Position numbers and translations under genes: made by a program. Below the pieces are notes generated by a model. That model saw nothing but the letters and a program-made list of their open reading frames with translations. It did not search any database and was not told where the DNA came from. A stretch of 64,000 nucleotides of DNA, from the NCBI RefSeq assembly GCF_023055435.1, contig NW_025964001.1:41416001-41480000 (forward strand). The letters are read 5' to 3'. How positions within the stretch are numbered: position 1 is the stretch's first letter; each line of letters begins with the position of its first letter. This document shows, piece by piece, positions 835 to 51,600 of this stretch. The stretch comes from Haliotis rufescens (Eukaryota).

Positions 835-1794
835 TTACTCAATCACACTGCCCAACACTGCTGATTCAAACAGACCTCTGTCCCTTACAATAGGCTTGTG
901 ATAGAATGTGGCAAATGTTCTCTCTGATGACCAGTCAGCCTTTTCCAAAATGTTTGAAATGGGTACAGATGCACACCTCGCTGCAGAGGTGGAGGCAGCA
1001 CGAACACTATGAGCTTTAAATACCTGAATGTCCACACCAGACTTATGAAGTCCGAGTTTTGTCCATCTCGACAGTGTGTCTCTTGACACTGCATTGTGAG
1101 GCCTAATGTAAGTTATAAATAGTTGTGTAACCGATCCTCTGATGCTCTCAGTTCTGCTGAGGTAACACTTCAAAGTGTTCAGTGGGCAAAGTGACTCGTC
1201 ATGAGAATAGGCCCTGACTTCAACTGGTTTAGGCAATCTACCTGGTCTAGACTGCTTGACTAATTTGTCAATATGAAATGTAAACAAAGTATCATCCTGA
1301 CTCCTTGTCATAAGGTCTATATCTAACAAGTGTAAGGTCTGACCTCTCTGGGCAGACACTAATGAAAGCAACAATACTAACTTGATAGTCAAATCCTTTA
1401 AAGATAAATCTTTCAGCGGTGTAAGCTTCTGAACAAAACACAAAACATCTGTCACACTCCACATCTCTGTATAACGTGGTTTTGGTGGCAACATCTCGAA
1501 AACACCCTTCAGAGACCGACACACTACAGGGTGTGATCCACAAGGTCTATCGTCCAAATCAATAAATGTTGATAACACACATCGTGCTGTGTGTATAGAA
1601 CTGTAACCAAGTTTTTGGTTCAATAAACACATAAAAAAGTCCAACACCTGTCCTAGATGTGGTCTAGTAAAATCAATTTCCCTTTCACAACAAAAGAGTC
1701 TCCATTTCCGGATATATGTAGCTTCCTGGTGCCAGAACGCCACGAACTGATGATGACACTGGTTGCATCCGAAGAAATGCCTCTGTCTGCGCAT
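835..1794 (-). CDS. Tyrosine recombinase (integrase) of DIRS-A
   Basis: Catalytic motifs SAQRGQ (R), LCPLNTL, HSVR (H-x-x-R), ADW and TFYHK (Y). Overlaps the RH/MT ORF as usual in DIRS. True N-terminus uncertain. Confidence 0.88.
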   Translation of the reverse strand: MRRQRHFFGCNQCHHQFVAFWHQEATYIRKWRLFCCEREIDFTRPHLGQVLDFFMCLLNQKLGYSSIHTARCVLSTFIDLDDRPCGSHPVVCRSLKGVFEMLPPKPRYTEMWSVTDVLCFVQKLTPLKDLSLKDLTIKLVLLLSLVSAQRGQTLHLLDIDLMTRSQDDTLFTFHIDKLVKQSRPGRLPKPVEVRAYSHDESLCPLNTLKCYLSRTESIRGSVTQLFITYIRPHNAVSRDTLSRWTKLGLHKSGVDIQVFKAHSVRAASTSAARCASVPISNILEKADWSSERTFATFYHKPIVRDRGLFESAVLGSVIE

Positions 1795-2695
1795 ATTTGC
1801 CGGAGAGTAGGAAAGCTGTCAGATTCAGTCTCTTTCCTAGCGGGTGAACCTTCCCGTCCAGTGACGTCACCACAGTCTTCCCTTTGGGCAACTTGACAGG
1901 CCTACAACAGATCATTTTGATTAATTGCGAAAACCATGACTGGGTTGACCGTAGTGGAGCAATAACAAGCGCATCTGCTTTATCTGACTGTATTTTCTGC
2001 AAGCACTTAGACAAGAGACAAAAAGGTGGGAAGCAATAAATGAGCTCTTTTGACCATGACAAACTGAAAGCATCTACAGCTTCGGCTTCAGGCTCTGGCC
2101 GCCAACTGACAAAACGTGGAAGCTTCGTGTTTAAACGTGAAGCAAACATATCTATGGCTGGATTCACACCAAAGTGTTCAAGGATTTTCTGAAACACAGT
2201 TTTGTCCAAAGACCTCTCAGTTCGCTCAGAAAAATTTCTTGACGCTCTGTCAGCTTCAACATTTGTCAGTCCCGGCACATGAGCCACTGTCAACCACACA
2301 CTATGTTCTATACACCAGAACCAAATTTCCCTTGCAAGATCATTACAAACTTTAGATTTTGAACCTTCCATAGCTTTTAAGTAAGCCACTGCTGTAGTAT
2401 TATCACATAAAATGTGGACATGTTTTCCTTGAAATGACTCAGTCAGGGAGAAAGCTTGAAGGGCTAGATAGACAGCTTTCATTTCCAAGGCATTAATATG
2501 GAGCTGCTTCTCCTGGAGTGACCAACGCCCTCCTATAGACTTCTTGTTATTACAAGCCCCCCATCCTAATAGACTAGCATCAGTACTAATTTCCATATCT
2601 GGCTCGGAGGAAGTTGTAATGTGTTTCTCAGCACCCATGGCATTGTCCTTCCACCATTTTATTTCCTGCTTAGCATCCTCTGATAATACCACCAT
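1685..2695 (-). CDS. RNase H + DIRS methyltransferase-like domain of DIRS-A pol (frameshifted from RT part)
   Basis: RNase H: STDASLLGWG, HINALEMKAV, CDNTTAVAY, HVPGLTNVEADRASR. MT: IDMFASRLN, DAFSLSW, YCFPPF. Confidence 0.9.
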   Translation of the reverse strand: MVVLSEDAKQEIKWWKDNAMGAEKHITTSSEPDMEISTDASLLGWGACNNKKSIGGRWSLQEKQLHINALEMKAVYLALQAFSLTESFQGKHVHILCDNTTAVAYLKAMEGSKSKVCNDLAREIWFWCIEHSVWLTVAHVPGLTNVEADRASRNFSERTERSLDKTVFQKILEHFGVNPAIDMFASRLNTKLPRFVSWRPEPEAEAVDAFSLSWSKELIYCFPPFCLLSKCLQKIQSDKADALVIAPLRSTQSWFSQLIKMICCRPVKLPKGKTVVTSLDGKVHPLGKRLNLTAFLLSGKYAQTEAFLRMQPVSSSVRGVLAPGSYIYPEMETLLL

Positions 2696-2720
2696 CGTAT
2701 CAAGTCACCATAATTATCCG

Positions 2721-3038
2721 TTATGCCTCCGTTTTTTCCCTATCTAGTTGTCTGTAGTGCAGTGGTCCGAAAATGACAGCATGGAATGTGCTTACAAATA
2801 GACCTAGCAACTGAGCCACTGTCCTTACAGAACATTGTTGCTGAGTCAAAACTAAATTACATTTAGTTTGGATAGCCTGAGCTTTGTCATCTGGTAAAGC
2901 CAGTGTCATTTTCTCTGAGTCAATGTGGAAACCAAGAAATTTTATTCTAGTAGATGGTTCTAAAACAGATTTCTCAAAATTAACTGTAAAGCCAAGTGAA
3001 CTGAAGGCTCTTGACATTTCACATACTGAAACTGAACA
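2721..3038 (-). pseudogene. Reverse transcriptase of DIRS-A, C-terminal piece
   Basis: LGFTVNFEKSVLEPSTRIKFLGFHIDS. Joins in frame to 8388 when element B is excised. Confidence 0.9.
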
Positions 3039-3592
3039 ATTACATTAAGTAATACGTTACCACTGTTATACCGAGGCTGTTGTCTCCCACAACTGCTGCT
3101 ATAGCGAAATCTACCACAGAGATCTCAATTACCTCATGCAGCACATGCGTAGCCACCTAGCTGCCATGTGACACCCTTCACTCTTGTCTCTTCGCTTGCT
3201 CTAGCAAGACGTACAATAAACTGCTCAAGCGTTCCTGTTTCTCCGACCATTCGGTGATATTTATTACTGTTTATTCTCTTTAATAAACTGTGCTTTTACG
3301 GGGCGTTTGCTGTAACTACGCTTGGAAATATTTTTCCCGCCAAAAGGAAATATTTTTCCCGCCCTTTTTTTTTTCTATATACTTGCGGGGTGTCTCGTAT
3401 GCACGTTGCGTCTTACGTTCCCCTGTTCTAGTATATCTTGGGTTTTTTACATCACTTATTCCTCTATATGTTATATGTGTATGTTCTATATTCCCATTGC
3501 TCGTTTATTTTCTTGTGAAAATACTCGTTTGTGACTATTTGTGGTGCGTGTGTTGTAACCATGTTTTGCTCTTTGTTCATAGTACAAACAAA

Positions 3593-4697
3593 ATGTCTGA
3601 CATGGATGTTTCGCCGTCCTCCACCCCCTCTACCCCCACACCAGGAGCTGCGGGGTGTGCCGCAAGCGAGCGCTACCGGCTGTATGTGCAGTCCGTTTCC
3701 ACCCCTGTGGTGGCCGGCTCGTCCGGTCGGGGTCCCCTTGCGGGTACCACCACCACGGCTGCGGCGGATCCCTTGGCGGCCCGTGGGCTGTCCGGGGTTT
3801 AGCTTGTGGACTCCAAGCTGGCGGCCTTATCTCAGGATAGGCCGCTGGCTGTTCCGTCCCCGGCCACTTCGGTGGCCGCGGGGTCAGACGCAGGGTCAAC
3901 CGGTACGGCGACGGCTCCCGTGGTCACCGGTCCTTCCCCCGAACCATTGCTCCCGCTATCGGTTAAGGACTGCGTGGCCATGGTTTATGACCTCTTTGAG
4001 GACATGCCCCGGCCGGTACCGCGGGGAATCCACGACTGTGGGTTCCTCCGAGGTATACGATGAGTCTTCCGACGCGGCTTTCCCCGCATCAACCTTGCTG
4101 CGCGGTATCAAGCCTTCCTTGGAGAACGCCTTCGCGGCGGCCTCCGGTCGGGGTCTCCCGTTGCCTCCGACGTCTTTTGAGAAAGGGTTTATTCCCGGTA
4201 CATGACCTTGCCTTTCCCGAGGCTGGTCCTACCGCGGAGGCCCATGTTGAGCGGTTGGGTGTCCGTGCCCCACCGGCTGCTACGGTAACGCAAGCTACCT
4301 TGCACCAGCTGGACGCCCTCGCTCAGCACTCCATGTCTCACGGAGACACTTACTTGGCTGCAGCGGCCCGTCTGGTCGAAGGTTCTCCCACGGACCGTGA
4401 CCAGCGCATTTACAACTGCCTGCTCAGTTTAAATGTTTCCCTGGAGTACGTTGCCGAGGACTCTCGGCACACACTTGCTCTTGTTGGGTCCCTGCATAGG
4501 CGCCTGGGTGCCGCTCCTAACCGGAGCGCGCCCCAGGCTGCTGCGGCCGGTAGGTCTAAGGGGTCAGGTTCTTCTTCCTCTGGGAAGTAGCCCCGCCCTG
4601 AGGGCTCCGGTATGGGCAATCAGCTGCCCTTTCGCGGGAAGACGGGGAACTGGGGGAAGCCCAAGTCGTCGACGGACGGCAAGGGCCCCTCCAGGTG
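3593..4697 (+). pseudogene. gag-like ORF1 of DIRS-B (stops/frameshifts)
   Basis: Starts MSDMDV at 3593; low-complexity P/A/S region; basic C-terminus; position between left ITR and pol. Confidence 0.7.
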
Positions 4698-4789
4698 ACT
4701 CTCATTGGAGGGGTTCGTATGCCGACAGCGCCAACTTCGGTTGGCCCTTAGGCGAACCCGAGTCACTTGGCCCTGGACAGTTGCGCCTG

Positions 4790-6475
4790 CCGCAGCCTGT
4801 CAGGGCCCCCTCTCCTTCCCCAGTGGGAGCCAGACTCCAGACTTACTGGGAGAATTGGGAACAAGTGTTCGACGACCCGTGGGTGGTCAACACGATTCGG
4901 TACGGCTTTCGACTTGATCTCAAAGCGAATCCGCCGCTCACCGTTGCCCCGTTGGCAGGTTTCGATTCGGAAACCGATCTTCCCATCCACGCCGATGCCA
5001 TCGGCAGGTTGGTGGAGAAGGGGCAGTACGGGAGTTAGCTCTACCAGAAATAACACCGGGGTTTTACTCCAGGATATTTCTCGTTCCCAAGTAGGACAGT
5101 GCCGAACTCAGAATGATTCACACGTCCGCTCCCTGGCTGTTCACCCGGTTAACCACCCCCATAGTGGGGTTCCTCCACAGGAGGGGTGTCCGGTACTTCG
5201 CGTAACTGGACGACTCGCTAGTAGCAAATCGAATGATGGACATCCTGTCATGCCATCTCGTTTTCGCACGTCGGCTCGTTGGGGTGGATTATCAATCTCC
5301 CCAAGAGCGAGTTAACCCCTTCTCAGAACTTGCTGTTCATCGGAGGTCGGTTCAACACGGTGTCCCATCGCCTCTTTGTCCCCCCAGACCGGTGGCACAA
5401 GATTCAGGCGATGATTGCCAAAGTCTTAGCGGTGCAACAGACTGTTCACTTTTGGGAACAGCTGTTAGGGCTACTTGTATCAGCCCAGGACTGCACCGAA
5501 CGGGGTCGTCTCCAACTCCGCCCGCTGTAACGGTTTTTAATCCAGTTGTTAGCAACGGAGGTGAACATTGCGACCGTCTCCCTCCCGGATCGGCTCCGAC
5601 CGCATCTGGAGTGGTGGATGGTCCCTTACAATGTCTTATCAGGAGTCTCTATGCGGCCCTACCGGGCCACGTTGAACCTGTATACAGACGCCTCTCTAGT
5701 GGGCTGGGGCGCCCATCTAGAGGGGGAGGTGAGCTCGGGGCTGTTGTGCGTAGACGAACTAGGTCTTCACATCAATTGTCTCGAGTTCAAGGCAGTGATC
5801 AACGCAGTCAATCACTGGAAGCATCGTCTCCTCGACGCCCGGCTCATGCTGGCGACCGACAACACGACGGTAGTGTTCTATGTGAACAAACTGGGGGGAA
5901 CCCACAGTCACTCGCTACTCGATCTCACGTTCGAGTTTTACGCTCTGGTGGACAGTGTCCCGTGCCAGATACGCGCCCGTCACATCCCAGGTGTGCGGAA
6001 CGTACTAGCCGATGCTCTATCGAGGCCTCAGGATCCGAGCCCCACAGAGTGGATGCTGAACCCAGTAGTGTTTCAGTGGCTGTGCGAACGTTTGGGTCGT
6101 CCGATGGTCGACCTGCTCGCAACGCGGTTCAACAATCAACTCCCGTTGTTTGTATCACCAGTCCCGGACCCGAGGGCCATCGATCACGATGCTCTCGCGT
6201 TAGACTGGACAGGCTTGGACGCTTATGCTTACCCGCCGACAGCGTTGAAACCACACATTCTAAGCTAGCTCTGAGGAGTTCGCTGTCGAATGTTACTGAT
6301 CGCGCCCATGTGGCCGAACAGATCGTGGTACCCTGACTTGCTGACCCAGGTCACGCAGTCACCACTTCCACTGCCTGTGAGACCGGATCTCTTGATCCAC
6401 CCTCACACCTGTCAGCTTCATCCAAACGCAGGGCAGTTCAATCTGCACGCGTGGATGTTGTCACCGAGCGTCTGA
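4790..6475 (+). pseudogene. pol (RT-RH-MT) of DIRS-B, disrupted
   Basis: PVGARLQTYW; internal RT deletion (LRMIH|TSAPWLFT); YLDD mutated to *LDD; YTDASLVGWG; VDLLATRFN; YAYPPT. Confidence 0.88.
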
Positions 6476-14739: not shown

Positions 14740-17240
14740 ATAGCAACGCCTGTAGGCGGAAGACTCCAGATTTTTGCAGACAATTAGACCATGCTTGCAG
14801 ACCCCTTTGTGACACAGCTGCTTCAACAAGGGTATCGATTACCGATGATCTCACCACCACCTACAACACTCCATCCCCATCAGAAAACGTATCCGTCCAG
14901 GCAACAATGATCGAAACAGTGGGTACGTTACTAGCAATAAACGCCATCTGATGTCTCGGCACACTTCCCGCGACCCCCAGGTTTTTTATTCCCCCATTTT
15001 TCTTGTCCCCAAAAAGGACAGTTTAAAACTACGGCTCATTTTCAACATGAAGACTTTCAACGCTATGTACCTTGAAACCCCACCACATCCCATGACGTCG
15101 ATCGCGCTCCTTCGTACGCTCATTCATCCCGGCTATTATATGATCAGTCTCGATCTCCAAGACGCTTATCTGCACATTCCCATCCATCGGGAGCACCGTC
15201 ACTTCCTCTGGTTCGTTTTTCAAGACCACCAGTACCAATGGAAGGTGCTCCCGTTCGGAATTTCTTCGGCCCCACGGGATCGTGTTCGATTCTTATCTAG
15301 ACCACTGCATTCACGTTCATGCAGATGCCGTTTTCCTCCATCTACAACTCGCCTTCACAGTGCGTCTTCTCAGACAACTCGGCTGGCTAATCAACGAACA
15401 AAAGTGGGAACTCATTCCCACTCGACTCCAAGCCCTGTTTGACACTCGGCAAGGTCGGATGTTCATTCCCCACGACCGATGGGTGAAGATTCAACGCCTC
15501 GTACCGTCAGCACTCAAACAGCCGCTTCAACTGCGTCAATGGCAACTCCTGGGCCTCCTAACATCGGCGCAGGCCCTCACTGTATGGGGTAGATTTCATT
15601 TGCTACCTCTCCAATGTTTTCTCGCGCCCTTTATCAGGATCAACGATTGTCACACGCCGATTTCTCTACCGCTCAATCTCCACCCTCATCTTCAATGGCG
15701 GCTGGTCACGTAAAACGTTTGCGACAGGGTCTCCTTGACGCGATTCGTCCCGTCCCTCCATCTGTTTGTTGACGCTTCAATTGTCGGTTGGGGAGCACAT
15801 TTTCAAGATCGGCAAGTAGCAGGGCGGTGGTCCGACGTAGAACGTTGTCTTCACATCAACAATCTTGAGTTCAAGGCAACATCCCTCATGATCCAGTCCG
15901 ACAACATGGCGGTTGTATGGTCCATCAACAGGATGGGATCCACGAAGTCGACGTCCCTACTCTCACTTGCTCTCGAGTTCTTTCGTCTCATCGACTCCCT
16001 CAACATACATGTCCGCGCTCGGCACATTCCGGGGATATCCAACGTCATAGCAGACTCCCTGTCCCGACCGGACAGACCATCACCAACCGAGTGGTCTCTT
16101 CATCCACAATCGTACCAATGGATATGTCAACTTTATCGGGCCCCGGAAGTAGACCTCTTTGCCACCCGTTTCAACGCTCAACTATCCTGATTCGTATCTC
16201 CCATTCCCGACCCTAGGGCTTTGGAGCACGACGCGTTGGCGATCTCGTGGAAAGGTCTCAATGCCTTGCCCCCGATGGGGCTCCTTCCCTGGGCCCTACA
16301 GAAGGTAGCAGCCACCGATCACCTGTCTCTGATTTTTGTCCCGCCCTATTGGCCAACCCGCAACTGGTTCCCCACGTTGCTAAGGCTCGCCAACGAAAGA
16401 TTGTCAACCTACCTCGCGGCAATTAACTCCATCATTGCCACCACTTCCGGTGCAAAGGTTTCCACGGTTACAGAACTACAATCGCTCATCCGTTTCTACA
16501 AATTAGCCGACCAAGCTGCTCGTTTTCGGCCTCCTTCGTAGCACCTAAACGTTATTCTTCAACAACTGGTTTCCGGTGATTACGAATCACCGACGGAGAA
16601 GGATTTTGACACAGTTATGCTGAAGGCCGTTTTTTTGTTGGCTTTGGCCACTGCCGCACAGGTTAGTGAAATTCATGCTTTGGATGTCACTAGGGTCCAG
16701 TTTGACATATCCGGACGTGGCAAAGCGTTCCTGGGGCTTGGTTGGGATTTTGTGGCAAAGAACCAACTTCCCGGACAACCGGATCGGCTATTATGATTCC
16801 CCCGCTCTCGGCTTTTTGGGGATCAAACGACCATGAAGACCTCTCTCTGTGCCCTGTTCGGGCGCTTCGAATGTATCTCTATGCGTCGCGCCTCCACAGA
16901 AGTTCCCGGAAGAGAGACTTTTCGTCCGATTGTCAACCGCGTCTACATCGGAAATTTCTCGAACGACACTATCCTTCTGGTTCCGCTCCATCATTCTGTG
17001 AGCGTATACTTTCGCCAGGCTGCCTCCACTTACAACGTCCAATCCTAACGAGACTTGTGCGGTTGCTTCCACCATGGCCCTCTATAGTAACTGCACCCTT
17101 TCAACCATCATGGAAGGGTGCTTTTGGAAGTCGGATACTGTGTTTGCTTCCCACTACCTGCAAGAAATTTCAGTCACAGACGTACAAGGGCTCCACAAGG
17201 TTGGTCAGTTGGTATCGGCTCAAATTTACGAAGTGACCAA
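14740..17240 (+). pseudogene. pol and YR remnants of DIRS-C
   Basis: RT 14951-15442, RH 15735-16190, MT to ~16390, YR (ATAAQVSEIHAL, LCPVRAL, CFWKSDTVFASHYL). Many frameshifts and deletions. Confidence 0.88.
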
Positions 17241-17429
17241 TCGGTGCAGTCAATCGTGTACATTCAGTCACAATCGTACAAGGGCTCAACAAGTTCGGTT
17301 CGTTGGTGTTGGCACAACAACTGTCTCACCCTAGTTCACGCAGAACATAAACAGTTATACTGCGTAATCCTTGCGGGTTACAATTGTATATACAGAATAA
17401 ATCAATAAACATTTACATGTTTTTTGATT

Positions 17430-18140
17430 GTTCGGGTTTCCCAGATTGAGCCCCTTTTGGAGGGTGGATTAGCTCATCTGTAGAGACTTTTTAGTCTTAA
17501 TTTATGAAGTCACCATTCGGTGCGGCCGATCAAAACAAAACAAAACAAACACAACAACAAAAAAGATCGGTGTCCCGAACCTTTATTCCACTCACGTGTG
17601 CTTAAGGTATCTGTGATGTAGGGTTTTGGTACGAAGGTCCATTGCTATTGAATATTGTCGATCGTTCCTCTTCTCGTTTTTGGTTCGCTTCATACACTCG
17701 GACGTGTTTGATAACCATGACAAAGCGTTAAAAGAGTTACCAAACCTAACTCACTCTATGGTCCCTGGGAGATAGTTGCTGTGTTTTGTTTGAAGAATTG
17801 ATGCCCTTCCAGGATCGATTTCAAGTCGTCTGCCATTTCGCTTATGGATTTATAGCTACGAGGTCATTCTATATGTACAATGACATACGGGAAAAAACAT
17901 TTGGCATGTACACCCGATCTCATGCTGTTTCGTTTAAGTAACCTATCGGGATCATTAACACCGATTGATCGTGTGTATTTTTTCCCGCTCACGAGTTCAT
18001 GTCTTTAGACGCTAGACAGTTTTTCAAAATTCTGAAACAAATTCAAAATTAAACTGTCTTGAACCAGCTTCCACATGCATATCTCACAGTTGTAGTCTAT
18101 ACAGGCTAGGGTATCTGCGGCCCACCATCAAACTGTGGGA
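17430..18140 (+). ncRNA. Putative conserved structured cis-RNA in the DIRS-C 3' non-coding region
   Basis: Multiple stems with compensatory changes relative to the homologous region of DIRS-F (49666-50446); see findings. Confidence 0.6.
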
Positions 18141-18666
18141 TAAAATGCAAAGTGTGAGATAGCATAAGTTTAAAAATTGGGAAATTTTAGTATAAATTGT
18201 ACATTTATATACTTATCCTATCTCACACGTGATAGGCCCACCCGACCATCCCCGCATCTCATTTACTCTAGCCTAATAAGCTCTGCGAAAGAGAATGAAT
18301 TGGTAGAGGCGCACACGAGGTCAGTTCAAGCAGGCACAGCGTGCACGAGAGGCACGTAATTGACCTAGCTTTTGGACATAACCATGGAGATGCAGGGGGG
18401 CTTGGGCGGCTATTTTTAGTTTTAGAAGCTGGAAACATGATTCAAGCACGTTCCAACATAGGATCAAAGAAAAAGGAAGAAATGCAAAGTGTGAGATAGG
18501 ATAAGTATATAAATATACAATTTACTAAAATTTCCAATTCCATTAAATATACACAAACACTTATTGATTGTGATAACACTCCAACATTAACCCATACCTT
18601 TGATTTAACACCATCATCGTTTGTACCATTTATTTGACTATGATATTTTACCGTTCAACCCTTTAG

Positions 18667-27600: not shown

Positions 27601-30600
27601 CCCCATTGTCGGCGCCGGATGCGGCTTTAAGACCTTGTGTTATACCCGGCGTCGGCCGAGGCAGGCCAATTGGTCTGGGGGAGGATCCGAGACCAGGCTT
27701 CGGCTCCGGCTTGAGGTCGCACCCCAGCGGAGGGGTGGCGGGCGCCAGCCTGTGCACTACCGACGCACAATTTTTCCTAGCGGAGCCAGACGCCTCTTCC
27801 GAGGCCGAGGCTTCCACTACTGGATACCTAGCCCAGAGCCAGGTGGGTTCCCTTGAACCCCCGGCACCTTGGGACCAGGACTCAGCTTCCGGCCGGGTGC
27901 AGCCCGGGGATGCGAGGGCCCAGGCCTTCGGGCGTCCCCTTCCGACTTCGTCTGCTTCATCTCTCGGGGAAGAGTCGATTAACTTCTGCTTGGAAAAAAT
28001 AATCCGTTACCCTGGGGGGGGACTAAGGTCAAGCAGGGCCGACGGTTGCCCCCCTTTCCCGGGTGCGGTGCGGAGTTGAAGGCTGCTCACATATGCTTCG
28101 AGGAGCAATATCGTAATGCATACCAACAGCTCCGTGTGTCCGTACACTCCGCGTATCTGTCGGCTGTACAGAGGGAGTTAGCGGGGGAGGGGCCAGCCAA
28201 CTCTTTGGAGTTGGCCACGCAACTAACGAAAGTTCACAGTCATCTTGCGCAGGACGCTATTCGTAGCTGTGCCTCGCAGATGATGTGCGCTGTTATGGGC
28301 ATGCGCAGGCTGTGGATGTCAGTATCTAAATACTCGACTTCAACACGCCAAGACCTCCTTGCTTTGCCGTATAAGATGGGTGCCACCCTCTTCCCTGGGG
28401 CTCAACAGGTGGTGCGAGAGGCTGCTCAATTGTATGCTTCCAATACAAGAGCAAAAGAGGCAGGGGCTGGGGCAAGGCAGCTGGTCGAGGCCAGCAGGCT
28501 TTTCGCGGGGCCAGGGACCCATTGGGTTCCCATTAGCGCCCGAAGGCCCCCGGTTGGCCCCCGGTTGGACCCACAGTCGCAAGTTATCGAACTGCTGACA
28601 GCCGGGGTCCACTGCCTCAAGCTGGATGTCCCCTTAGGCGTCCGACTGGCTCTATTCCTGAAGGAATATGGGAGACAGTTACATCCAATTCCTGGACCCC
28701 GTCCATTTTAAGGGATGGCCATTTGCCTCGGTGGAAACATCATCCGCCCCCCTTCTCCGGGATAAAGCACACTCCGGTGCCTGCTACCCGAGAGAAGGCG
28801 GAATTCCTCCGTGCCGAGGTCGACACACTTCTTATGAAAAGAAGGAAAGCCAGGGCTTCTACTCAACATATTTCCTATTCACTAAAAAAGATGGAGGGTT
28901 CAGGCCTATTCTCAATCTGAGAAGGCTGAACAAAGTAATAGAGGTACCGTCCTTCAGGAGGGAGACACTGCGTTCAGTGATCTCAGCTGTCGAGACAGGA
29001 GAATGGCTAACGTCAATAGACCTAAAAGACGCCTATCTCCACGTACCCATACACCCCGAGTTCAAGAAATACCTGAGGTTTTCTTTCGACGGGAGGTGTT
29101 ATCAGTTCTGGGAACTACCATTCGGGATCTCCACGGCCCAGAGGGACCGAGGTCGGGAATCTGTCCTGGGGCTCCCCTTGACACTCCCGTTCCATCTTTC
29201 ACAGTTCAAACAGACGCGTCACTCTCCGGTTGGGGAGGCGTTCAGAACGATCACACTGCCCTGGGACTATGGTCTCAGCAGGAGATCAAACTGCATATCA
29301 ATGTGTTAGAATTGAGAGCGATCATGCCGCGATTCGCTGTACAGTGTTGCGTCCCTTAAGCACGCCAGAAACCTATGATTGTGGGTTCGAATCCCGGTTC
29401 CTCGCTCCTCACGAGTGGAGGCTTGACCCGGGGATATTCGGGATTTTCTATACAGGTCGTTACAGGTGGATCTGTTTGCGTCTGGGGTGAATCACCAGAC
29501 ACCAACGTTCTGCTCCCGAGTCCCCGACCCGAGGTGGGCGGCACCAGACACCTTCCAGCTAGATTGGACGGACAGAGTTCTGTGGGCCGAGTATGTTCAT
29601 CAAACATTACTAAATCGATAACACTCCAGGGAGCGTGCTCGGTTCGGTCCGTCAGTTCTCCACACTGGGCAGAGTTCTACATCTCTGGCCGATTGAGTCT
29701 TTGATTCGGGAATGGCGATTCTTCGGTAGCCATTACTAATCGATAATGTACTCGTTTTGCGCATGACCCTCGCTCGATCCTACGGGACCCTAAAGCCTGC
29801 CTAGCTACCAGGCGTATTGTCCCTAGCGATTATTGTCCCCGTTATCACTTGTACAAAAGTGGGTGGGGGTAGGGTGGGGGGGTGTTCTTGAGTTTTCACT
29901 TGCTTTACAACTGCGGCTTTTTTCATAGCGTATGGTCAGACCACGCCCTGTCTCAAGCCTCATGATAAGGTGGTGCCTCACGATAAGGTGGGTTCCATTT
30001 TATTAATTCTCTATAGTCTTGTGAAACGATGTGTTTATTTTCGCTTTTTGCAAACGAATGCCACTTCCTATATTATCTTTAGGAGTCTATCTTGATGTAA
30101 TAAGTGCCCCAAGGTGGATTTAATCTGAAAGAGAATCATACAAACCTGTAGAGGTTATGGATTCTCTGATGAAATCCTCCTTGGGGCACGGCTGCCCGCC
30201 CCCCCATATTCCATCTCCTATAAGACATTGGAAAAGTGATTTGGGTGAGAGTCGCTCCCCTTGGCGTGTGTCGCCTGTAAACCTCTATCCGTAACCTCTA
30301 CAGGTTTGTATGAATTTGTACGACTGAAAACAGACCAATAAAACATCGTTTTTAATCTGAAAAACACATTTTTTTATATGACACAAGAATGACAGTTCAG
30401 GTAACGACTGTAATCTGATATCATTATTTCAGGTAGAAGCCACTTGTATACTCTGTAAACGTTAAAACTCTACATTGATAATTGATCCTTCAACACATAC
30501 AGGATTTTAGATGAAATTGAAACTCATGTTCCTGGTTTCACATATTTTTCACCATATTCAGGTTCGTCTCCTGGTGGATCTAGGATCCTCCCCTTCCTCC

Positions 30601-42600: not shown

Positions 42601-45600
42601 CTCACGATATCAGGGTGCTACCTGTTTATCTCCCGGGGGTGGACAACGTCCGTGCGGACGCTCTGTCTTGCCGGATCCTCGCTCCTCACGAGTGGAGGCT
42701 CGACCCGGGGATATTCGGGATTTTCTCCCTGTTATACAGGTCGTTACAGGTGGATCTGTTTGCGTCTGGGTTAAATAACCAGACACCAACGTTCTGCTCC
42801 CGAGTCCACGACCCGAGGTCGGTGGCACCGGACGCCTTTCAGCTAGATTGGACGGACAGTTCTGTGGGCATTCTCCCCAGTACCTCTGATTTCCAAGGTC
42901 CTGTCTCAGCTAGGCACTCAGCCTGCGCGACTAATTGTGCTCCTGGCACCTCTTTAGTCGGCGCAGAGTGGGTTTCCAGTAATACTCAGGTTTCTGGCTC
43001 AGCCTCCTGTTATATTACCTTTACGACCGGACCTCCTATCCCAGAACGGGGCCCTCCACCCGAATCTCAGGATTCAATGGGTGGCTTGGCCACTGTCAGG
43101 AATCGCCTCCAGAAGAGCGGTATTCCTGCACGAGTTGCAGACACAATACTGGCTTCGCGGAGGGATTCGACAAACGTTCAGTACGATAGATAGGCCTGCT
43201 ATGCGCCCAGGTGTGTCGATAGAGGGATTGCAGATCTTTTTTCTGCAGATCTCGTATCCGTGCTTGAGTTTCTCCAGTCGCGACTAGATGACGGCCTGGC
43301 CGCATCAACAGTCCGAGGGTACTCTACAGCTATCGCAGCTTTTCACGTCCCTGTCGACGGGGCACTTCTGGGTGCACACCCATTAGTGCAGCGCTTTTTA
43401 GCAGGTGTGGACAGGATCCGACCGCCAGTCCGGCGGATCAGTCCCCCTTGGGACTTGTCAATCATTCTAGATTGGCTGTCCGGTCCTTCCTTTCGGGATC
43501 TGTCGTCTCTCTCTCTTCAGCTGTTGAGCTGGGAGACGGCGTTCCTTGTGGTGGTAACGTCCGGCAGACGGGTAGGCGACATTCGTGTTATGTCAGCCGA
43601 TCCCAAAATAACTGTCTTCCATGGGGTCGATAAATATCACCGGGACAGTCAGTTTTCGTCTACCGGACTATTACCGTCCTAGGGTCGCACACAATTCCAC
43701 GTGAACGGCTCCTATTGAGCTACCCGCTCTTTCACAGCCTTCCTCGTCGGGGACCACTGCAAGACATGCTCATGTCTTGGATGTCCGCACGACTCTCAAG
43801 GCCTATATCAGCAGAAATATGGGTGTCCGTAAGGATAACCAACTATTTTGCTGTTACTGCGGTAGGAAGGTTGGCTCACCTGCGAGTAAACAATCTATCT
43901 CGAGGTGGATAGTTTCAAACATTTGTACAGCGTATACGCTTACAGGCAGGGACCCCCCTACCAGGTTGTAGGCTCATTAGGTTAGAGCAGTGGCTGCGTC
44001 AAAAGCGTACGCCGCGGCTCTGCCCATTGAGCAGATCTGCTCCGCGGCTATTTGGAGCCAGCCGAGCACGATTCATCAAACCTTACCAACTCGACAAACA
44101 CTCAAGCGAGCGTACTCGGTTTGGTCAGTCAGTTCTCCGAACTGGGCAAAGTTCTAATCTCTAGCTGATTGAGCATTCGAGATTTTAGACAGTCTTCCGG
44201 TTATACTGCTCAGTAATGGTCCGGATTTTATCTTCTGCGGTCGATAAATATCAGTCCTTACTACTCGATAATACTCGTATTTTGCGCACGCACTCCTTCG
44301 ATCCTCGGGGACCCTCTGGCCTAGCTCAGCGCTGGTTATGGTCTCTCGTGATCTACGCCCTTATATCACTTGTTCAAAAAAGTGTGGGGGGGTGGGAGGT
44401 GTTTCGAGTTCTCAACTTATGACAAGCCGCAAAAAACAGGCTTTATCATAATATATGGTCGACCACGCCCTGTCTCTAGCCCCCGCCTTTCGACGGTGGT
44501 GCCTCACGATAAGGTTGGTTCCATTTATTGAACTCAATATTTTATTCTGTTGAATAATCAAATACGATGTATTTATTTACGCCTGTTGCTGACGGATGCC
44601 ACTTCCTAGATTATCTTTGGGAGTCTGTCTTGATGCAATAAGTGCCCCAAGGAGGATTTAATCAGAAAGAGAATTTTACAAACCTGTAGAGGTTATGAAT
44701 TCTCTGATGAAATCCTCCTTGGGGCACGGCCACCCACCTCCCCACATTCCGTCAGCATTTGACATATGGAAAGTGATTTGGGTGAGAGTTGCTCCCCCTG
44801 GCGTGAGGCGCCGTTGGGGGTGAGGCCCCGTAAGGGTGGTCGTATATCATACAAAAACGAAGTTTTTTGTGTGGTAACATTTTTTATTAAGGAAAATGGT
44901 TACAACTATGTCATATAGATTTTCTTGAGCAAGGAAAATGCAATAAGTGCCCCAAGGAGGATTTCATCAGAGAATTCATAACCTCTACAGGTTTGTAAAA
45001 ATTGTACACAATCTATCTTATCCTGAGATGATTTTGATTTTGGTGTTTACAGCTACCGACTTTGTCGACAGCCACACAGCTATATCGTCAGCAGGTTTCG
45101 TCATCGACTCTACTCCACCCTACCACACAGGCATAAACATACAACTTGACGAAAGATACATCACAGCGCCCATCCTTTCAGTGTGGTACATATTAGTAAA
45201 TTTACGAATTTTTAAACTTATCCTATCTCACACTATGCATTTCTTCTTATTCTTCGAACTTGGTGTGGAAACGTCCTAGAACAAAGTTTCCAGCTTCAAA
45301 AAACACCACTCACTCAAACACATCCCTTACATCACCAATCACCAGTGTGATCATGGTTCACGCACCACTAAAATCCCGTTCAACACAACCCGAGCGTCCT
45401 GATCACCTGACATATCCAGCACCCTCATTCTCAATTCTATCGCTGTGGTGTTAAGAGGTTATTCTTGAACAGAGAAATTTTGTTTGTTTTTGTTTTTTTG
45501 TTTTTTTTAATATATATATATAAAATTTAAATACACGACATCACTACTAAAGTTTACCATTACCACGAAGAGAGAGTGGTATTAATAACGATGTCCACTG

Positions 45601-48600: not shown

Positions 48601-51600
48601 TAGAGCAGCTAAGGCAGCCTCCTTAGCACTTCGTCAATCAATGAGAATCTAGGTGATGATAAATGGGAAAGTTTGCAAGATCCAGGATTTTCTGCAGCCA
48701 AGCTATCATACCACTAGTAGCAGATTACCTATGTCACTTAAGAAGTAAAAGGCATCTTATGATTTGACACTGGGCACTTACTGGACAGCGATCAGTTTTG
48801 TACCAACTACACACTTATGGGATAAAACTTGCTACAGTTCCCGAACTGATAGATCTACACAGATCTTTCAGACTGCGAGTAATTCAGGCGTTACCATGAC
48901 TTCAGGTTCCAAGGTTTCTGCTGTCACTGACCTTCGGATATTGATTCGCTCCTACCACCTTATGGACCAATCTTCCAGAATAAGCCGTCCAGCATGGGTT
49001 CTCCCTGTATTCCTCCGTCACTTCTCTTGGCTGACTATAAACCACTTGTGGATAAAACCTCGAACTTTACGTTCATGACGATTTTCCTGCTTGTGTTGAC
49101 TCCTGCAGCTCGTGTTAGAAGGACTCGTGCCTTAGACGTCGGTTGAGTCCGGTTCCAGTGTCTTCAATAAGATAGCATTCAAAGTGAAACAGATCGTCTT
49201 TTCAGCCTCCACCACTCTCTTTGATTGAGAGCTGATGTCATGGAAGACGTCTCACTTTGTCCAGCCTGAGCCTACAAGATCTACTTGAAGGCATCTCAGA
49301 CCATCCGTCACTGTCGCAAGCATGTTTTCATCCACTTGTCGACGGCTGCAACTTCGGATGTATCTTGAACCACCATCTCCACTGGCTGCGTTCTATCATC
49401 CTCAGGGTCTACGCCTCTGAGGGACTACCACCCCAGCTGCTTCCAATCCTCATGAGATGAGGGCAGTGACTTCCACCTTGGCGTTGCATAGTATTGCACA
49501 CTTTCAGCCATCATTGAGGGATATTATGGCGTTCTGATATGGTCTTCACCTCCTACTCCCAGGTCACAGCAGCCACACAGTGCAGATGAGGAAGCCCAGT
49601 GGACTACAAGTCCTAAGTCTGGTTTCCTGTATATACTGCAATAATTTCATTTATTGCTCATGTTAATCGGGTTTCCCAGACAAGCTCCCATTGGGAGGGT
49701 ATATATGCTTGTCTGTTGGGACTTCGGTCTACGTCAATAGAAGTCACCATTTGGTGTGGCCATTTGTTTAAATGGTGTCCCGATCTTCTACCTGCTCACC
49801 TCTGCCTTTGAGCATGTGATGTCTCAGTAGTTGATTGAAGACCTGTGTGATAAACGGGTCAACACCAACAGAAGTCACCATCTGGTGCGGCCATTTGTTT
49901 AAATGGTGTCCCGATCTTCTACCTGCTCACTTCTGCCTTTGAGCATGTGATGTCTCAGTAGTTGATTGAAGACCTGTGTGATAAACGGGTATCGTCAATC
50001 GTTCCTCTTCTCATTCTTACCTTATTCAATCTCTACCTGAGTTTGATAGGTTGACGAAGCGATAAAAGAGATGCCAAGCTGGTCCGCCTTGTGAGGTCTG
50101 TCTTGTAGAACCTGCGCTGGGGACGGGGTGTTTGAAACAAGACCCCTCCTCCTATCCGGGGTGAGGTTAAGTCGTGACCGAGTAGATGTCGCCTAGCTCA
50201 TGGTTACGCGGTCGTTCCTGGAACAGCGTCCTGTGTGAAACCAAGGAACACATGATTCCCCGATGTCATGATGTATATCTCTTGGTAGCACAAAGAGGGT
50301 TTTTTGAAGCAACCCTTACACAAGTTTATCACTAATCCTTGTAAAATCCTTGAATTTTCCTGATTAGTTCAAGCTTCCTCGTGTACGTCTCACGGTTGAG
50401 GTCCTTACAGGCTAGGGTATCTGTGCCCCACCTTCCAACCGTGGGATTAATGCATAGTATGAGATAGGATAAGTTTAAAAATTTGTAAATTTTCTTATAA
50501 ATTGTATGTTTATATACTTATCCTATCTCACACGCTATATGCCCACCCAACCATCCCCGCATCACAGTTACACTAGCCTGAACGCTCAGGAATGAGAATG
50601 AGGGTGCTGGATATGTCAGGTGATCAGGACACTGGGGTCGTGTCGCACTGGATTTTAGTGGTGCGTGAACCATGATCACAGTGGTGATTGGTGATGTAAG
50701 GGATGTGTTTGGGTGAGTGGTGTTTTTTGAAGCTGGAAACTTTGTTCTAGGACGTTTCCACACCAAGATCGTAGAATAAGAAGAAATGCATAGTGTGAGA
50801 TAGGATAAGTATGTAAATATACAATTTATTAGAAAATTTACAAATTTGTTTAAAACAGGTTATGTTCTTCATTAGTTTAAAATCACAGAAACATAAGTTT
50901 GATTATTGTTCACACAACTTAACATTCTGTGCTTGTATACCTTGTGTTAGGCACAGTGGACTAAAATGTATTGATTTCATCATTCACATTTTGTTTGCTC
51001 CATGAAAGTCATTGATGAAGTAGGTTTTCTCTATATTACCATGTTCTATATTTCTGACCACAGCGTAATCAAACAGCCAATAAAACAGTTTCACATGCTA
51101 TGTGTACTCCAACTCTGGACATTGATAGGGCTCAATAATAGTTCGATAACAAGTAGTGTATTTCTTGTTATTTTGTATTTCAGCTGGGAGGGAGTGTTTA
51201 TGGACGATGAGAGTGGTATCAAACAATTCGATGTTTATGTTGGAAGTAGACCAGGTCACCAGGACATCTCGGAATTGAGACGAGTAGAGAACCATTGTGC
51301 AGAACTTGACATTTCCCAAACTATGAAAGATGGTCACAGTTTGTTTGTTACAGTAAAGGTGATTTTGTCAGTGTTATATAACTTTGGATATCCAACATGC
51401 TTTTAGTTAAGGTCCAGATACAATTATGTTGAATCTAGTGGCAGAATGCACGTTGACACTTTTACATTATTATAGAAGTTGAAGAGGCTGAATGGTTGTG
51501 ATAAAACGATCGCATGAGTCCTCAATTCCATGATTTACCATAAGTCATTAAGCATCAAAGACGACATACCGTATTTTCTTGAGTATAGTACGCAGCCATG

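What the first reader, a model, noticed from the sequence alone, without database searches (positions are those of the whole stretch)
17430..18140. Covariation-supported multi-domain RNA structure in the 3' non-coding region of DIRS elements C and F
Seen: the ~700-nt region between YR and ICR is diverged between C (17430-18140) and F (49666-50446), yet the stems are kept through compensatory changes. Closing stem GUUCGGG/CCCGAAC (17430/17574) vs AUCGGG/CCCGAU (49666/49779). CAGAU(U)GAGC/GCUCAUCUG vs CAGACAAGC/GCUUGUCUG. GACUU/AAGUC with different loops. ACC(AUUY)GGU hairpin. GCCGAUC/GAUCGGU with a 33-nt A-rich loop vs GCCAUUU/AAAUGGU with a 4-nt loop. UUGUC/GACAA vs UCGUC/GACGA around conserved CGUUCCUCUUCUC...AAGCG.UAAAAGAG. 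CAUG/CAUG around a conserved CCCGAU loop. Next to the ICR, UCUCACAGUU/AACUGUGGGA (18082/18131) vs UCUCACGGUUG/CAACCGUGGGA (50388/50436), enclosing invariant ACAGGCUAGGGUAUCUG. Known: DIRS models cover only ITR/ICR pairing, and I recall no described large structured RNA here. Inference: a selected cis-acting RNA (packaging/RT-recognition signal, 3' processing or ribozyme). E and G show a different conserved stem set in the same position (e.g. loop CCUAGCU).
Basis: partly seen in the sequence, partly recalled or inferred. Interest (0 to 1): 0.8.

Follow-up and report, generated by a model that had tools for sequence, protein, structure and literature searches.

The report
Structured RNA in DIRS retrotransposon tails
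The non-coding tail of several DIRS retrotransposon families in this animal genome folds into a conserved, modular RNA. Its stems are kept by compensating mutations, no database or searchable paper describes it, and it gives a new handle on how these poorly understood elements copy themselves.

Summary
All quoted stems exist at the stated coordinates.

**Domain 1** (C 17430-17580, F 49666-49785) is a five-way junction on the sense strand.
- A covariance model finds at least 150 copies in the genome, in many lineages.
- 87% of cells pair, against 32-50% with slid partners.
- Two-sided changes occur 233 times, against 98 shuffled and 21-61 slid.

**Domain 2** (17655-17723) and a hairpin presenting an ACCCGAU loop also keep their shape with different stem sequences.

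- The terminal hairpin difference (ACAGUU/AACUGU) is double CpG decay of a dead copy.
- So is the A of GACAA.
- GACUU/AAGUC has no covariation and carries lineage-level mismatches. A local hairpin replaces it.
- In addition, the "invariant" loop differs in family H.

**Identity and function.** Rfam, ARAGORN and the literature searches gave no match, so this looks like an undescribed retroelement RNA family. Function is inferred only. The most likely role is a cis-acting recognition platform for the element's own proteins. An export or stability element is the main rival. Single-sequence folding energies are unremarkable and expression could not be shown.

The parts
17430..17580 (+). Element C, domain 1, a five-way junction. 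P1 is 17430-17436/17574-17580. P2 is 17442-17450/17472-17480 with apical CCC/GGG at 17452-17454/17462-17464. P3 is 17483-17488/17493-17498. P4 is 17511-17514/17519-17522. P5 is 17525-17531/17565-17571 with a 33-nt A-rich loop.
   Evidence: Model R1 scores 148.6 bits. The single-sequence minimum-energy fold has the same topology. Pair counts are, coordinates.
17655..17736 (+). Element C, domain 2. The outer stem is UUGUC/GACAA at 17655-17659/17719-17723. The invariant tract CGUUCCUCUUCUC starts at 17663. The inner stem is GGUU/AACC at 17682-17685/17713-17716. The hairpin is UCAUACAC/GUGUUUGA at 17690-17697/17704-17711. The invariant AAAAGAG lies at 17730-17736.
   Evidence: Model R2 and alignment A7: 89.4% of cells pair, against 31-50% with slid partners. 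All four inner-stem pairs covary.
17895..17935 (+). Element C, domain 3, a two-tier hairpin presenting the loop UACACCCGAUCU. The outer stem is AAAC/GUUU at 17895-17898/17932-17935. The inner stem is (U)GGCAUG/CAUGCU(G) at 17902-17908/17921-17927.
   Evidence: In RNAfold of 46-nt windows, the loop motif sits in a hairpin loop in 34 of 48 copies. The stems differ between C, F, H and L089.
18082..18140 (+). Element C, terminal hairpin abutting the ICR: UCUCACAGUU/AACUGUGGGA. It is conserved in all families. The window copy carries two CpG-decay changes.
18143..18228 (+). Element C, internal complementary region (ICR). This is the known DIRS feature and is not part of the new structure. It marks the 3' boundary.
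   Evidence: It is complementary to the ITR ends.
49666..49785 (+). Element F, domain 1. P1 is AUCGGG/CCCGAU at 49666-49671/49779-49784. P2 is 49677-49685/49707-49715. P3, P4 and P5 (GCCAUUU/AAAUGGU) follow.
   Evidence: Model R1 scores 131.3 bits. The fold is and the pair counts.
49850..49918 (+). Element F, partial second copy of domain 1 made by a 131-nt tandem duplication (units 49726-49856 and 49857-49987). It keeps P4 and P5 and gains a new closing stem, ACGGG/CCCGA.
   Evidence: Model R1 scores 42.3 bits. The repeat is family D19. Family members carry one to three copies of the unit.
49992..50070 (+). Element F, domain 2. The outer stem is UCGUC/GACGA at 49992-49996/50053-50057. The inner stem is ACCU/AGGU at 50019-50022/50048-50051. 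The hairpin is UCAAUCUC/GAGUUUGA at 50026-50033/50039-50046. AAAAGAG lies at 50064-50070.
50241..50286 (+). Element F, domain 3. The outer stem is CCAAGG/CUUGG(U) at 50241-50246/50281-50286. The inner stem is CAUGAU/GUCAUG at 50251-50256/50265-50270. The loop is UCCCCGAU.
50388..50446 (+). Element F, terminal hairpin UCUCACGGUUG/CAACCGUGGGA next to the ICR (50449-50533).

Best explanation
**Shown.**
- The roughly 700 nt between the tyrosine recombinase stop codon and the ICR is a non-coding tail shared by a clade of DIRS-type retrotransposon lineages in this genome (C, D-type, F, H and others).
- It folds on the sense (+) strand into separate modules, in this order:
  1. a five-way junction, 118-155 nt long, about 85-190 nt after the stop codon;
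  2. a nested stem-loop around two invariant tracts (CGUUCCUCUUCUC and GAAGCGNUAAAAGAG);
  3. a two-tier hairpin presenting an ACCCGAU loop;
  4. a 10-11 bp hairpin abutting the ICR.
- The stems keep pairing while their sequences change between lineages. Some junction strands and loops stay constant in sequence (GAAGUC, UUUCC, the two tracts, most of the ACCCGAU loop). The loops of P2, P4 and P5 vary.

**Inferred.** The fold is a cis-acting platform on the full-length genomic RNA. The conserved single-stranded nucleotides are displayed on a fixed scaffold. The element's own proteins (the Gag-like ORF1 product and/or the reverse transcriptase) recognise them. This marks the RNA as the template to be assembled into the particle and reverse transcribed, before the ITR/ICR steps that restore the ends.
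For: **Structure.**
- On 70 copies aligned to model R1, 87.1% of cells pair, against 32-50% with slid partners. Two-sided changes number 233 cells, against 98 shuffled and 21-61 slid. The covariation score is 0.269 against at most 0.088.
- The same holds on a sequence-only MAFFT alignment: 88.8%, and 106 cells against 44 shuffled and at most 13 slid.
- Between 28 sequence clusters, 19 of 37 pairs differ on both sides.
- Domain 2: 89.4% paired, and all four inner-stem pairs covary.

**Strand.** G.U cells number 281 and A.C cells 124. Two nearly invariant G.U pairs occur in 62 of 70 and 57 of 70 rows.

**Selection.**
- Between C and F, blastn aligns only domain 1 and the ICR-proximal end, not the coding DNA.
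- P5 loop length runs from 4 to over 30 nt with the stem kept.
- Lineages with duplicated modules still multiplied.

**Non-coding.** The recombinase ORF ends 85 nt upstream in H.

**Context.** How DIRS elements start reverse transcription, and what marks their RNA, is unknown (PMC7192593).
Against: - No experiment or read data bear on function. RNA status of the runs that hold the element is only a guess, and small-RNA reads were nearly absent.
- Single-sequence folding energies are ordinary: z from -2.9 to +0.4. In H the consensus fold is about 4 kcal/mol above the minimum-energy fold.
- Domain 1 lies about 650 nt upstream of the ICR, so it is not at the RNA 3' end, where a primer site would be expected.
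- The covariation rests on few independent lineage splits. C against F dominates the cell counts.
- All evidence comes from one genome.
- P1 is the weakest helix (72% paired).
Confidence: 0.4

Rival explanations
1. The tail is a post-transcriptional element that recruits host factors to export, stabilise or enhance expression of the unspliced element RNA. It would work like the constitutive transport element of simple retroviruses, the RNA transport elements of murine IAP and MusD elements, or the hepadnaviral PRE.
For: - The position matches: a multi-stem element between the last ORF and the 3' repeat of a retroelement RNA. That is where CTE-type elements sit (reviews PMC3856414 and PMC4829213, found).
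- The layout is modular and tolerates duplication.
If true, it would create a need for such an element.
Against: - No sequence or model similarity to any Rfam entry.
- No splice joints were seen in the part of H that was laid, 1000-6400.
- Host-factor binding cannot be tested here.
Confidence: 0.25
2. The conserved hairpins act at the DNA level or in the single-stranded minus-strand cDNA. Examples would be second-strand priming or tyrosine recombinase binding, rather than a role in RNA.
For: - DIRS-1 makes linear single-stranded cDNA intermediates (PMC7192593).
- Inverted repeats fold on either strand, and the antisense strand of F domain 1 even has the better z-score (-4.6).
Against: - Conserved G.U pairs on the + strand would be C.A mismatches in the minus strand. 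Pairing falls from 87.1% to 80.9% when the other strand is read.
- The two near-invariant wobble pairs are specific to the sense strand.
Confidence: 0.07
3. One module is a self-cleaving ribozyme or an RNA 3'-processing signal.
For: - Multi-way junctions with conserved junction nucleotides are typical of small ribozymes.
- AAUAAA signals lie just upstream of domain 1 in C and H.
Against: - No hammerhead, HDV-like, twister, pistol, hatchet or hairpin model matches, even at E<=10 on C, F or H.
- Contigs run through the region without a break at the domain.
Confidence: 0.05
4. The apparent covariation is a by-product of relatedness and CpG decay, and the tail has no structural function.
For:
- Cell counts are inflated by shared ancestry.
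- Folding energies are ordinary.
Against: - Slid-partner controls, which keep relatedness, give 3 to 10 times fewer two-sided changes.
- Many changes are transversions or non-CpG (A-U to U-A, C-G to G-C).
- At least five different P5 and three P4 stem sequences all pair.
Confidence: 0.08

Closest known systems
ITR/ICR complementarity system of DIRS elements (Cappello model; tested in Dictyostelium DIRS-1, PMC7192593)
   Same: It is a cis-acting nucleic-acid feature of the same elements. The new structure ends directly at the ICR.
   Different: The ICR works by complementarity to the element's termini. The tail modules have no match to the ITRs and pair only within themselves. No tail structure is described in the DIRS papers read.
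3' UTR RNA structures of non-LTR retrotransposons recognised by their reverse transcriptase (R2 3' UTR, stem-loops of stringent LINEs; from my own knowledge)
   Same: A fold in the tail of a retroelement RNA that is conserved while the sequence drifts.
   Different: Those structures sit at the very 3' end and serve target-primed reverse transcription. Here the main domain lies about 1 kb from the element's end, and the element uses a tyrosine recombinase.
Retroelement RNA export and expression elements: MPMV CTE, IAP RTE, MusD MTE, hepadnaviral PRE (PMC3856414, PMC4829213)
   Same: Multi-stem elements between the last ORF and the 3' repeat. They are modular and sometimes duplicated.
   Different: There is no sequence or model similarity. 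Host-factor binding is unknown. These elements are known only from LTR elements and viruses of vertebrates.
Duplicated structured modules in flavivirus 3' UTRs (xrRNA and dumbbell elements; from my own knowledge)
   Same: Tandem duplication of a folded sub-module inside a long structured 3' UTR, as with P4-P5 in F.
   Different: They are unrelated in sequence and fold. No evidence of exonuclease stalling exists here.

Membership tests
Any Rfam 15 family (including hammerhead, HDV-like, twister, pistol, hatchet and hairpin ribozymes) | A covariance-model score at or above the family's gathering threshold. | tested here: not met
   There are 0 hits in the window at gathering score. E<=10 scans of the C, F and H tails list only far-below-threshold matches. 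Most are miRNA-precursor models on the palindromic ICR; the rest are scattered sRNA, snoRNA and lncRNA models.
tRNA or tRNA-like structure | A cloverleaf detectable by ARAGORN. | tested here: not met
   There are 0 genes in L001, L031 and L081.
DIRS internal complementary region | Complementarity to the outer ends of the two ITRs. | tested here: not met
   Only 18143-18228 and 50449-50533 match ITR ends. 17430-18140 has no such match.
Selected structured RNA (general criterion) | Base pairs kept through two-sided changes more often than in controls that keep relatedness. | tested here: met
   - Domain 1: 233 cells against 21-61 with slid partners.
- Domain 1 on an alignment not fitted to the model: 106 cells against at most 13.
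- Domain 2: 93 cells against 3-26.
Selected structured RNA (general criterion) | Single-sequence folding energy well below that of shuffled sequence. | tested here: inconclusive
   z is -2.9 for C, -2.4 for F, and +0.4 to -1.7 for the other lineages.
RT-recognition element of non-LTR type | Location at the 3' end of the RNA template. | tested here: not met
   Domain 1 lies about 560-660 nt upstream of the ICR and about 1 kb from the element's end.
RT-recognition element of non-LTR type | Specific binding by the element's RT. | not testable with these tools
   This needs protein-RNA binding assays.
CTE/RTE/PRE-type export element | Host export-factor binding and rescue of an export-dependent reporter. 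| not testable with these tools
   Only the position and the modular layout resemble these elements. No model match was found.

The most novel reading that the evidence does not exclude
Domain 1 is the missing initiation platform of DIRS reverse transcription. It would be a scaffold on which the RT binds and starts minus-strand synthesis, by protein- or self-priming, as the epsilon element does for hepadnaviruses. The terminal hairpin would position the ICR for end repair. This would explain why no tRNA primer site has been found in DIRS elements.
Probability: 0.1. Interest if true: 0.85.

Novelty: new variant of a known kind. Interest (0 to 1): 0.6.

Why it matters
DIRS elements are the least understood order of retrotransposons. 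Apart from the ITR/ICR complementarity, no cis-acting signal is known. How their RNA is chosen and how reverse transcription starts are both open questions (PMC7192593).

A conserved, modular RNA fold in the tail supplies concrete pieces to probe, mutate and use as bait:
- a five-way junction;
- two invariant tracts;
- a displayed ACCCGAU loop;
- a hairpin against the ICR.

The covariance models can also be run on other genomes to learn how widespread the fold is.

The case carries a practical warning as well. In dead copies within CpG-depleting genomes, paired CpG decay on both arms of a hairpin mimics compensatory change.

Tried and rejected
- **RNAalifold on MAFFT alignments.** It recovered little, because bulges and indels shift stem registers between families. 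I replaced it with hand-set structures, covariance-model realignment and pair counting with controls.
- **Single-sequence MFE and z-scores.** They were not discriminating, and the antisense strand folds as well.
- **Nested versus pseudoknot pairing in domain 2.** The invariant CUCUU tract could pair with AAGAG either way. This cannot be decided because both strands never vary.
- **A long-range GAUCG/CGGUC pairing proposed by RNAalifold.** F shows A.C there, so I did not adopt it.
- **P3a, the extension of P3.** It pairs in C, D and F but fails in H-like lineages, so I left it out of the robust core.
- **Public runs.** Contigs from three organism labels hold family H including its tail. Their RNA status is a guess, the small-RNA raw reads gave two reads, and no ends or cleavage sites were seen.
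- **Short non-autonomous derivatives, as a test of cis requirement.** The closely spaced hits I fetched turned out to be a rearranged tandem array.
- **Elements E and G.** There are only two copies, so no test is possible.
- **Consensus sequences.** I built none for any element. The majority lines printed by the alignment tool were not used.

Full report
**Setting.** The window is G000:C223:41416001-41480000 of a 1.33-Gb animal genome. Element C carries decayed RT, RNase H and tyrosine recombinase (YR) reading frames on the + strand. The catalytic HY motif lies near 17155 and the frame ends by 17334. Element F is bounded by 231-nt inverted repeats at 45208-45438 and 50588-50818. Its reading frames are too decayed to identify. 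The stretches 18143-18228 and 50449-50533 are complementary to the ITR ends and are therefore the ICRs. The finding concerns the DNA between the YR frame and the ICR.

**Observation.** Between C and F, blastn aligns only 17432-17527 with 49667-49761 (73%) and the ICR-proximal end. It does not align the coding DNA. Parts of the tail are therefore at least as conserved as the genes.

**More copies.** Searches of the whole genome returned 30 C-like and 30 F-like loci. These fall into several sequence types:
- the main C type;
- a partial upstream duplicate of domain 1, made by a tandem duplication of about 263 nt that is present in many C copies but not in the window copy;
- a D type, 72-76% identical to C;
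- the F type, in which a 131-nt unit occurs one to three times.

**Domain 1.** I set a five-helix structure by hand on a MAFFT alignment of 35 copies and built covariance model R1 from it.
- R1 finds C (148.6 bits), F (131.3 bits) and a partial copy in F's second repeat unit (42.3 bits) in the window, all on the + strand.
- It finds at least 150 places in the genome.
- These include new lineages. One is family H, which has many copies of identical score. I fetched one H locus (L081). There the YR frame ends at 4989, domain 1 lies at 5075-5192 and the ICR starts near 5753.
- L081 differs from the copies seen in public runs by a lesion in RT. I therefore describe H only as little decayed.

Pair counts for domain 1:

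| Alignment | Cells paired | Slid partners | Two-sided cells | Shuffled | Slid | Covariation score |
|---|---|---|---|---|---|---|
| 70 copies fitted to R1 | 87.1% | 32-50% | 233 | 98 | 21-61 | 0.269 vs at most 0.088 |
| 35 copies, MAFFT only | 88.8% | at most 49% | 106 | 44 | at most 13 | 0.242 vs at most 0.065 |

The second row is not fitted to the model, so the result does not depend on the fitting. Grouped into 28 sequence clusters, 19 of 37 pairs differ on both sides between cluster majorities.

Examples of stems that change sequence but keep pairing:
- P5: GCCGAUC/GAUCGGU, GCCGUUC/GAACGGU, GCCAUUU/AAAUGGU, GCCAUUC/GAAUGGU and GCCGA/UCGGU.
- P4: CACC/GGUG, CGCC/GGCG and CGUC/GACG.

The loop of P5 runs from 4 nt to more than 30 nt while the stem is kept. 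P1 is the weakest helix (72% paired), partly because its CpG decays.

**Strand.** G.U cells number 281 against 124 A.C cells. Reading the other strand would lower pairing from 87.1% to 80.9%. Two wobble pairs are nearly invariant: G.U at the base of P5 in 62 of 70 rows, and U.G in P2 in 57 of 70 rows. The folded strand is the sense strand, which is most simply the RNA.

- *GACUU/AAGUC.* It shows no two-sided change and carries lineage-level mismatches (A.C in 14 rows, G.G in 8). It also overlaps the first pair of P4. The local hairpin P3 (GAGACU/AGUCUU in C, GGAC-UUCG-GUCU in F) replaces it.
- *Terminal hairpin.* The masters of C, F and H all have CACGGUUG/CAACCGUG. Among 26 C/D copies the two CpGs decay independently (CG/CA 6, TG/CG 5, CA/TG 3, CA/CG 3, CG/CG 3, TG/CA 2). 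The window's ACAGUU/AACUGU is therefore a chance double decay. The only lineage-level changes are two wobble swaps in H (UCCUAC for UCUCAC). The hairpin is conserved, but compensatory change does not prove it.
- *The enclosed 'invariant' loop.* It differs in H.
- *UUGUC/GACAA.* Most C copies have GACGA, a U.G pair. The window's A is again a CpG transition.

**Domain 2.** Model R2 was built from F copies only and then used to align all families. It gives 89.4% paired cells against 31-50% with slid partners.
- All four pairs of the inner stem change on both sides: GGUU/AACC in C, ACCU/AGGU in F, ACCC/GGGU in H.
- The apical hairpin switches U-A to A-U.
- The domain surrounds two tracts that never vary, CGUUCCUCUUCUC and GAAGCGNUAAAAGAG. 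CUCUU could pair with AAGAG as a nested helix or as a pseudoknot. This cannot be decided.

**Domain 3.** In 34 of 48 copies the 46-nt window folds so that the CC(C/A)(G/A)A motif sits in a hairpin loop. The stems differ between lineages:

| Lineage | Inner stem | Outer stem |
|---|---|---|
| C | GGCAUG/CAUGCU | AAACG/CGUUU |
| F | CAUGAU/GUCAUG | CCAAGG/CUUGG |
| L089 | CUGCAUGA/UCAUGCAG | none noted |
| H | ACACA/UGUGU | none noted |

**Cautions.**
- Single-sequence energies are ordinary: z from -2.9 to +0.4.
- In H the consensus fold lies about 4 kcal/mol above the minimum-energy fold.
- RNAalifold on plain alignments fails because stem registers shift between families.
- Cell counts are inflated by shared descent. 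The C/F split supplies most of them.
- All data come from one genome.

**Identity.**
- Rfam gave nothing at gathering score in the window.
- At E<=10 on C, F and H it listed only far-below-threshold matches, mostly miRNA-precursor models on the palindromic ICR.
- ARAGORN found no tRNA-like gene.
- The tail has no conserved reading frame. In H the YR stop lies 85 nt upstream, and the longer frames found there fall in a T-rich insert that C and F lack.
- Full-text searches found no description of a structured tail in DIRS elements.
- The Dictyostelium study states that the start of reverse transcription and its primer are unknown. It mentions only a small 3' hairpin as a candidate.

**Expression.** Contigs of three runs from three organism labels hold family H including its tail. 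Their RNA status is a guess. Small-RNA raw reads gave two reads. No ends or cleavage sites appeared. Expression and processing remain open.

**Mechanism.** What is shown: a modular sense-strand fold under selection, which displays invariant single-stranded nucleotides and tolerates duplication of sub-modules in lineages that went on to multiply.

What is inferred, with my estimates:
- a cis-acting recognition platform for the element's own proteins: 0.4;
- a host-factor export or stability element of the CTE/RTE/PRE type: 0.25;
- a role in the minus-strand cDNA or in DNA: 0.07;
- a ribozyme or processing signal: 0.05;
- no function: 0.08.

**Verdict.** The object looks like an undescribed RNA family of a known general kind, namely cis-acting structured RNA of retroelements.

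Noticed in passing
window 49726-49987; L003, L005-L007, L009, L011, L012, L019, L027, L030: Both families carry tandem duplications inside the tail. F has a 131-nt unit in one to three copies. C has a unit of about 263 nt (window 17255-17514 equivalent) that is absent from the window copy. Each variant occurs in several loci, so the duplicated forms multiplied.
   Followed up: partly
L091 = G000:C223:43545800-43551200: A repeating unit of about 2.65 kb. It is made of the 3' part of family H (L081 3644-6139) followed by an inverted piece (4292 back to about 4108). It occurs at least twice in tandem and is a rearranged array, not a miniature element.
   Followed up: partly
window 17396-17409; L081 5038-5043: AATAAA signals within a conserved AATAAACATTT lie between the recombinase stop and domain 1 in C and H; F has AATAAT. 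This could be an early polyadenylation site that separates mRNA from full-length template RNA, or chance in AT-rich DNA.
   Followed up: no
window 17913-17919 and 17946-17953: The displayed loop CCCGAUC is complementary to AUCGGG 30 nt downstream. The same hexamers form the closing stem of domain 1 in F and H. The downstream partner is missing in F and imperfect in H, so a long-range or alternative pairing is possible but unsupported.
   Followed up: partly
window 29586-30010 and 44061-44548: The tails of elements G and E (72% identical) share predicted stems, for example a 12-bp GCCGAG...CUCGGU stem at their start. Model R1 does not match them. Two copies are too few to test.
   Followed up: partly
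L081 2839-2852: Contigs of three public runs carry 164 letters where this genomic copy has 12. The L081 copy therefore has a deletion in its RT region despite otherwise long frames.
   Followed up: no
L081 4400-6150: Near-identical sequence of family H is held by runs filed under five coded organism labels (A-E). This suggests a recent spread or closely related host species.
   Followed up: no
window 18150-18230 and 50452-50540; L081 5751-5850: The ICR is itself an imperfect palindrome. It draws weak matches, far below threshold, to plant and animal miRNA-precursor models.
   Followed up: yes
L024, L027, L086: These copies have internal deletions that join domain 1 directly to later parts of the tail. 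Examples are domain 1 position 65 joined to 365, and 32 joined to 412.
   Followed up: no
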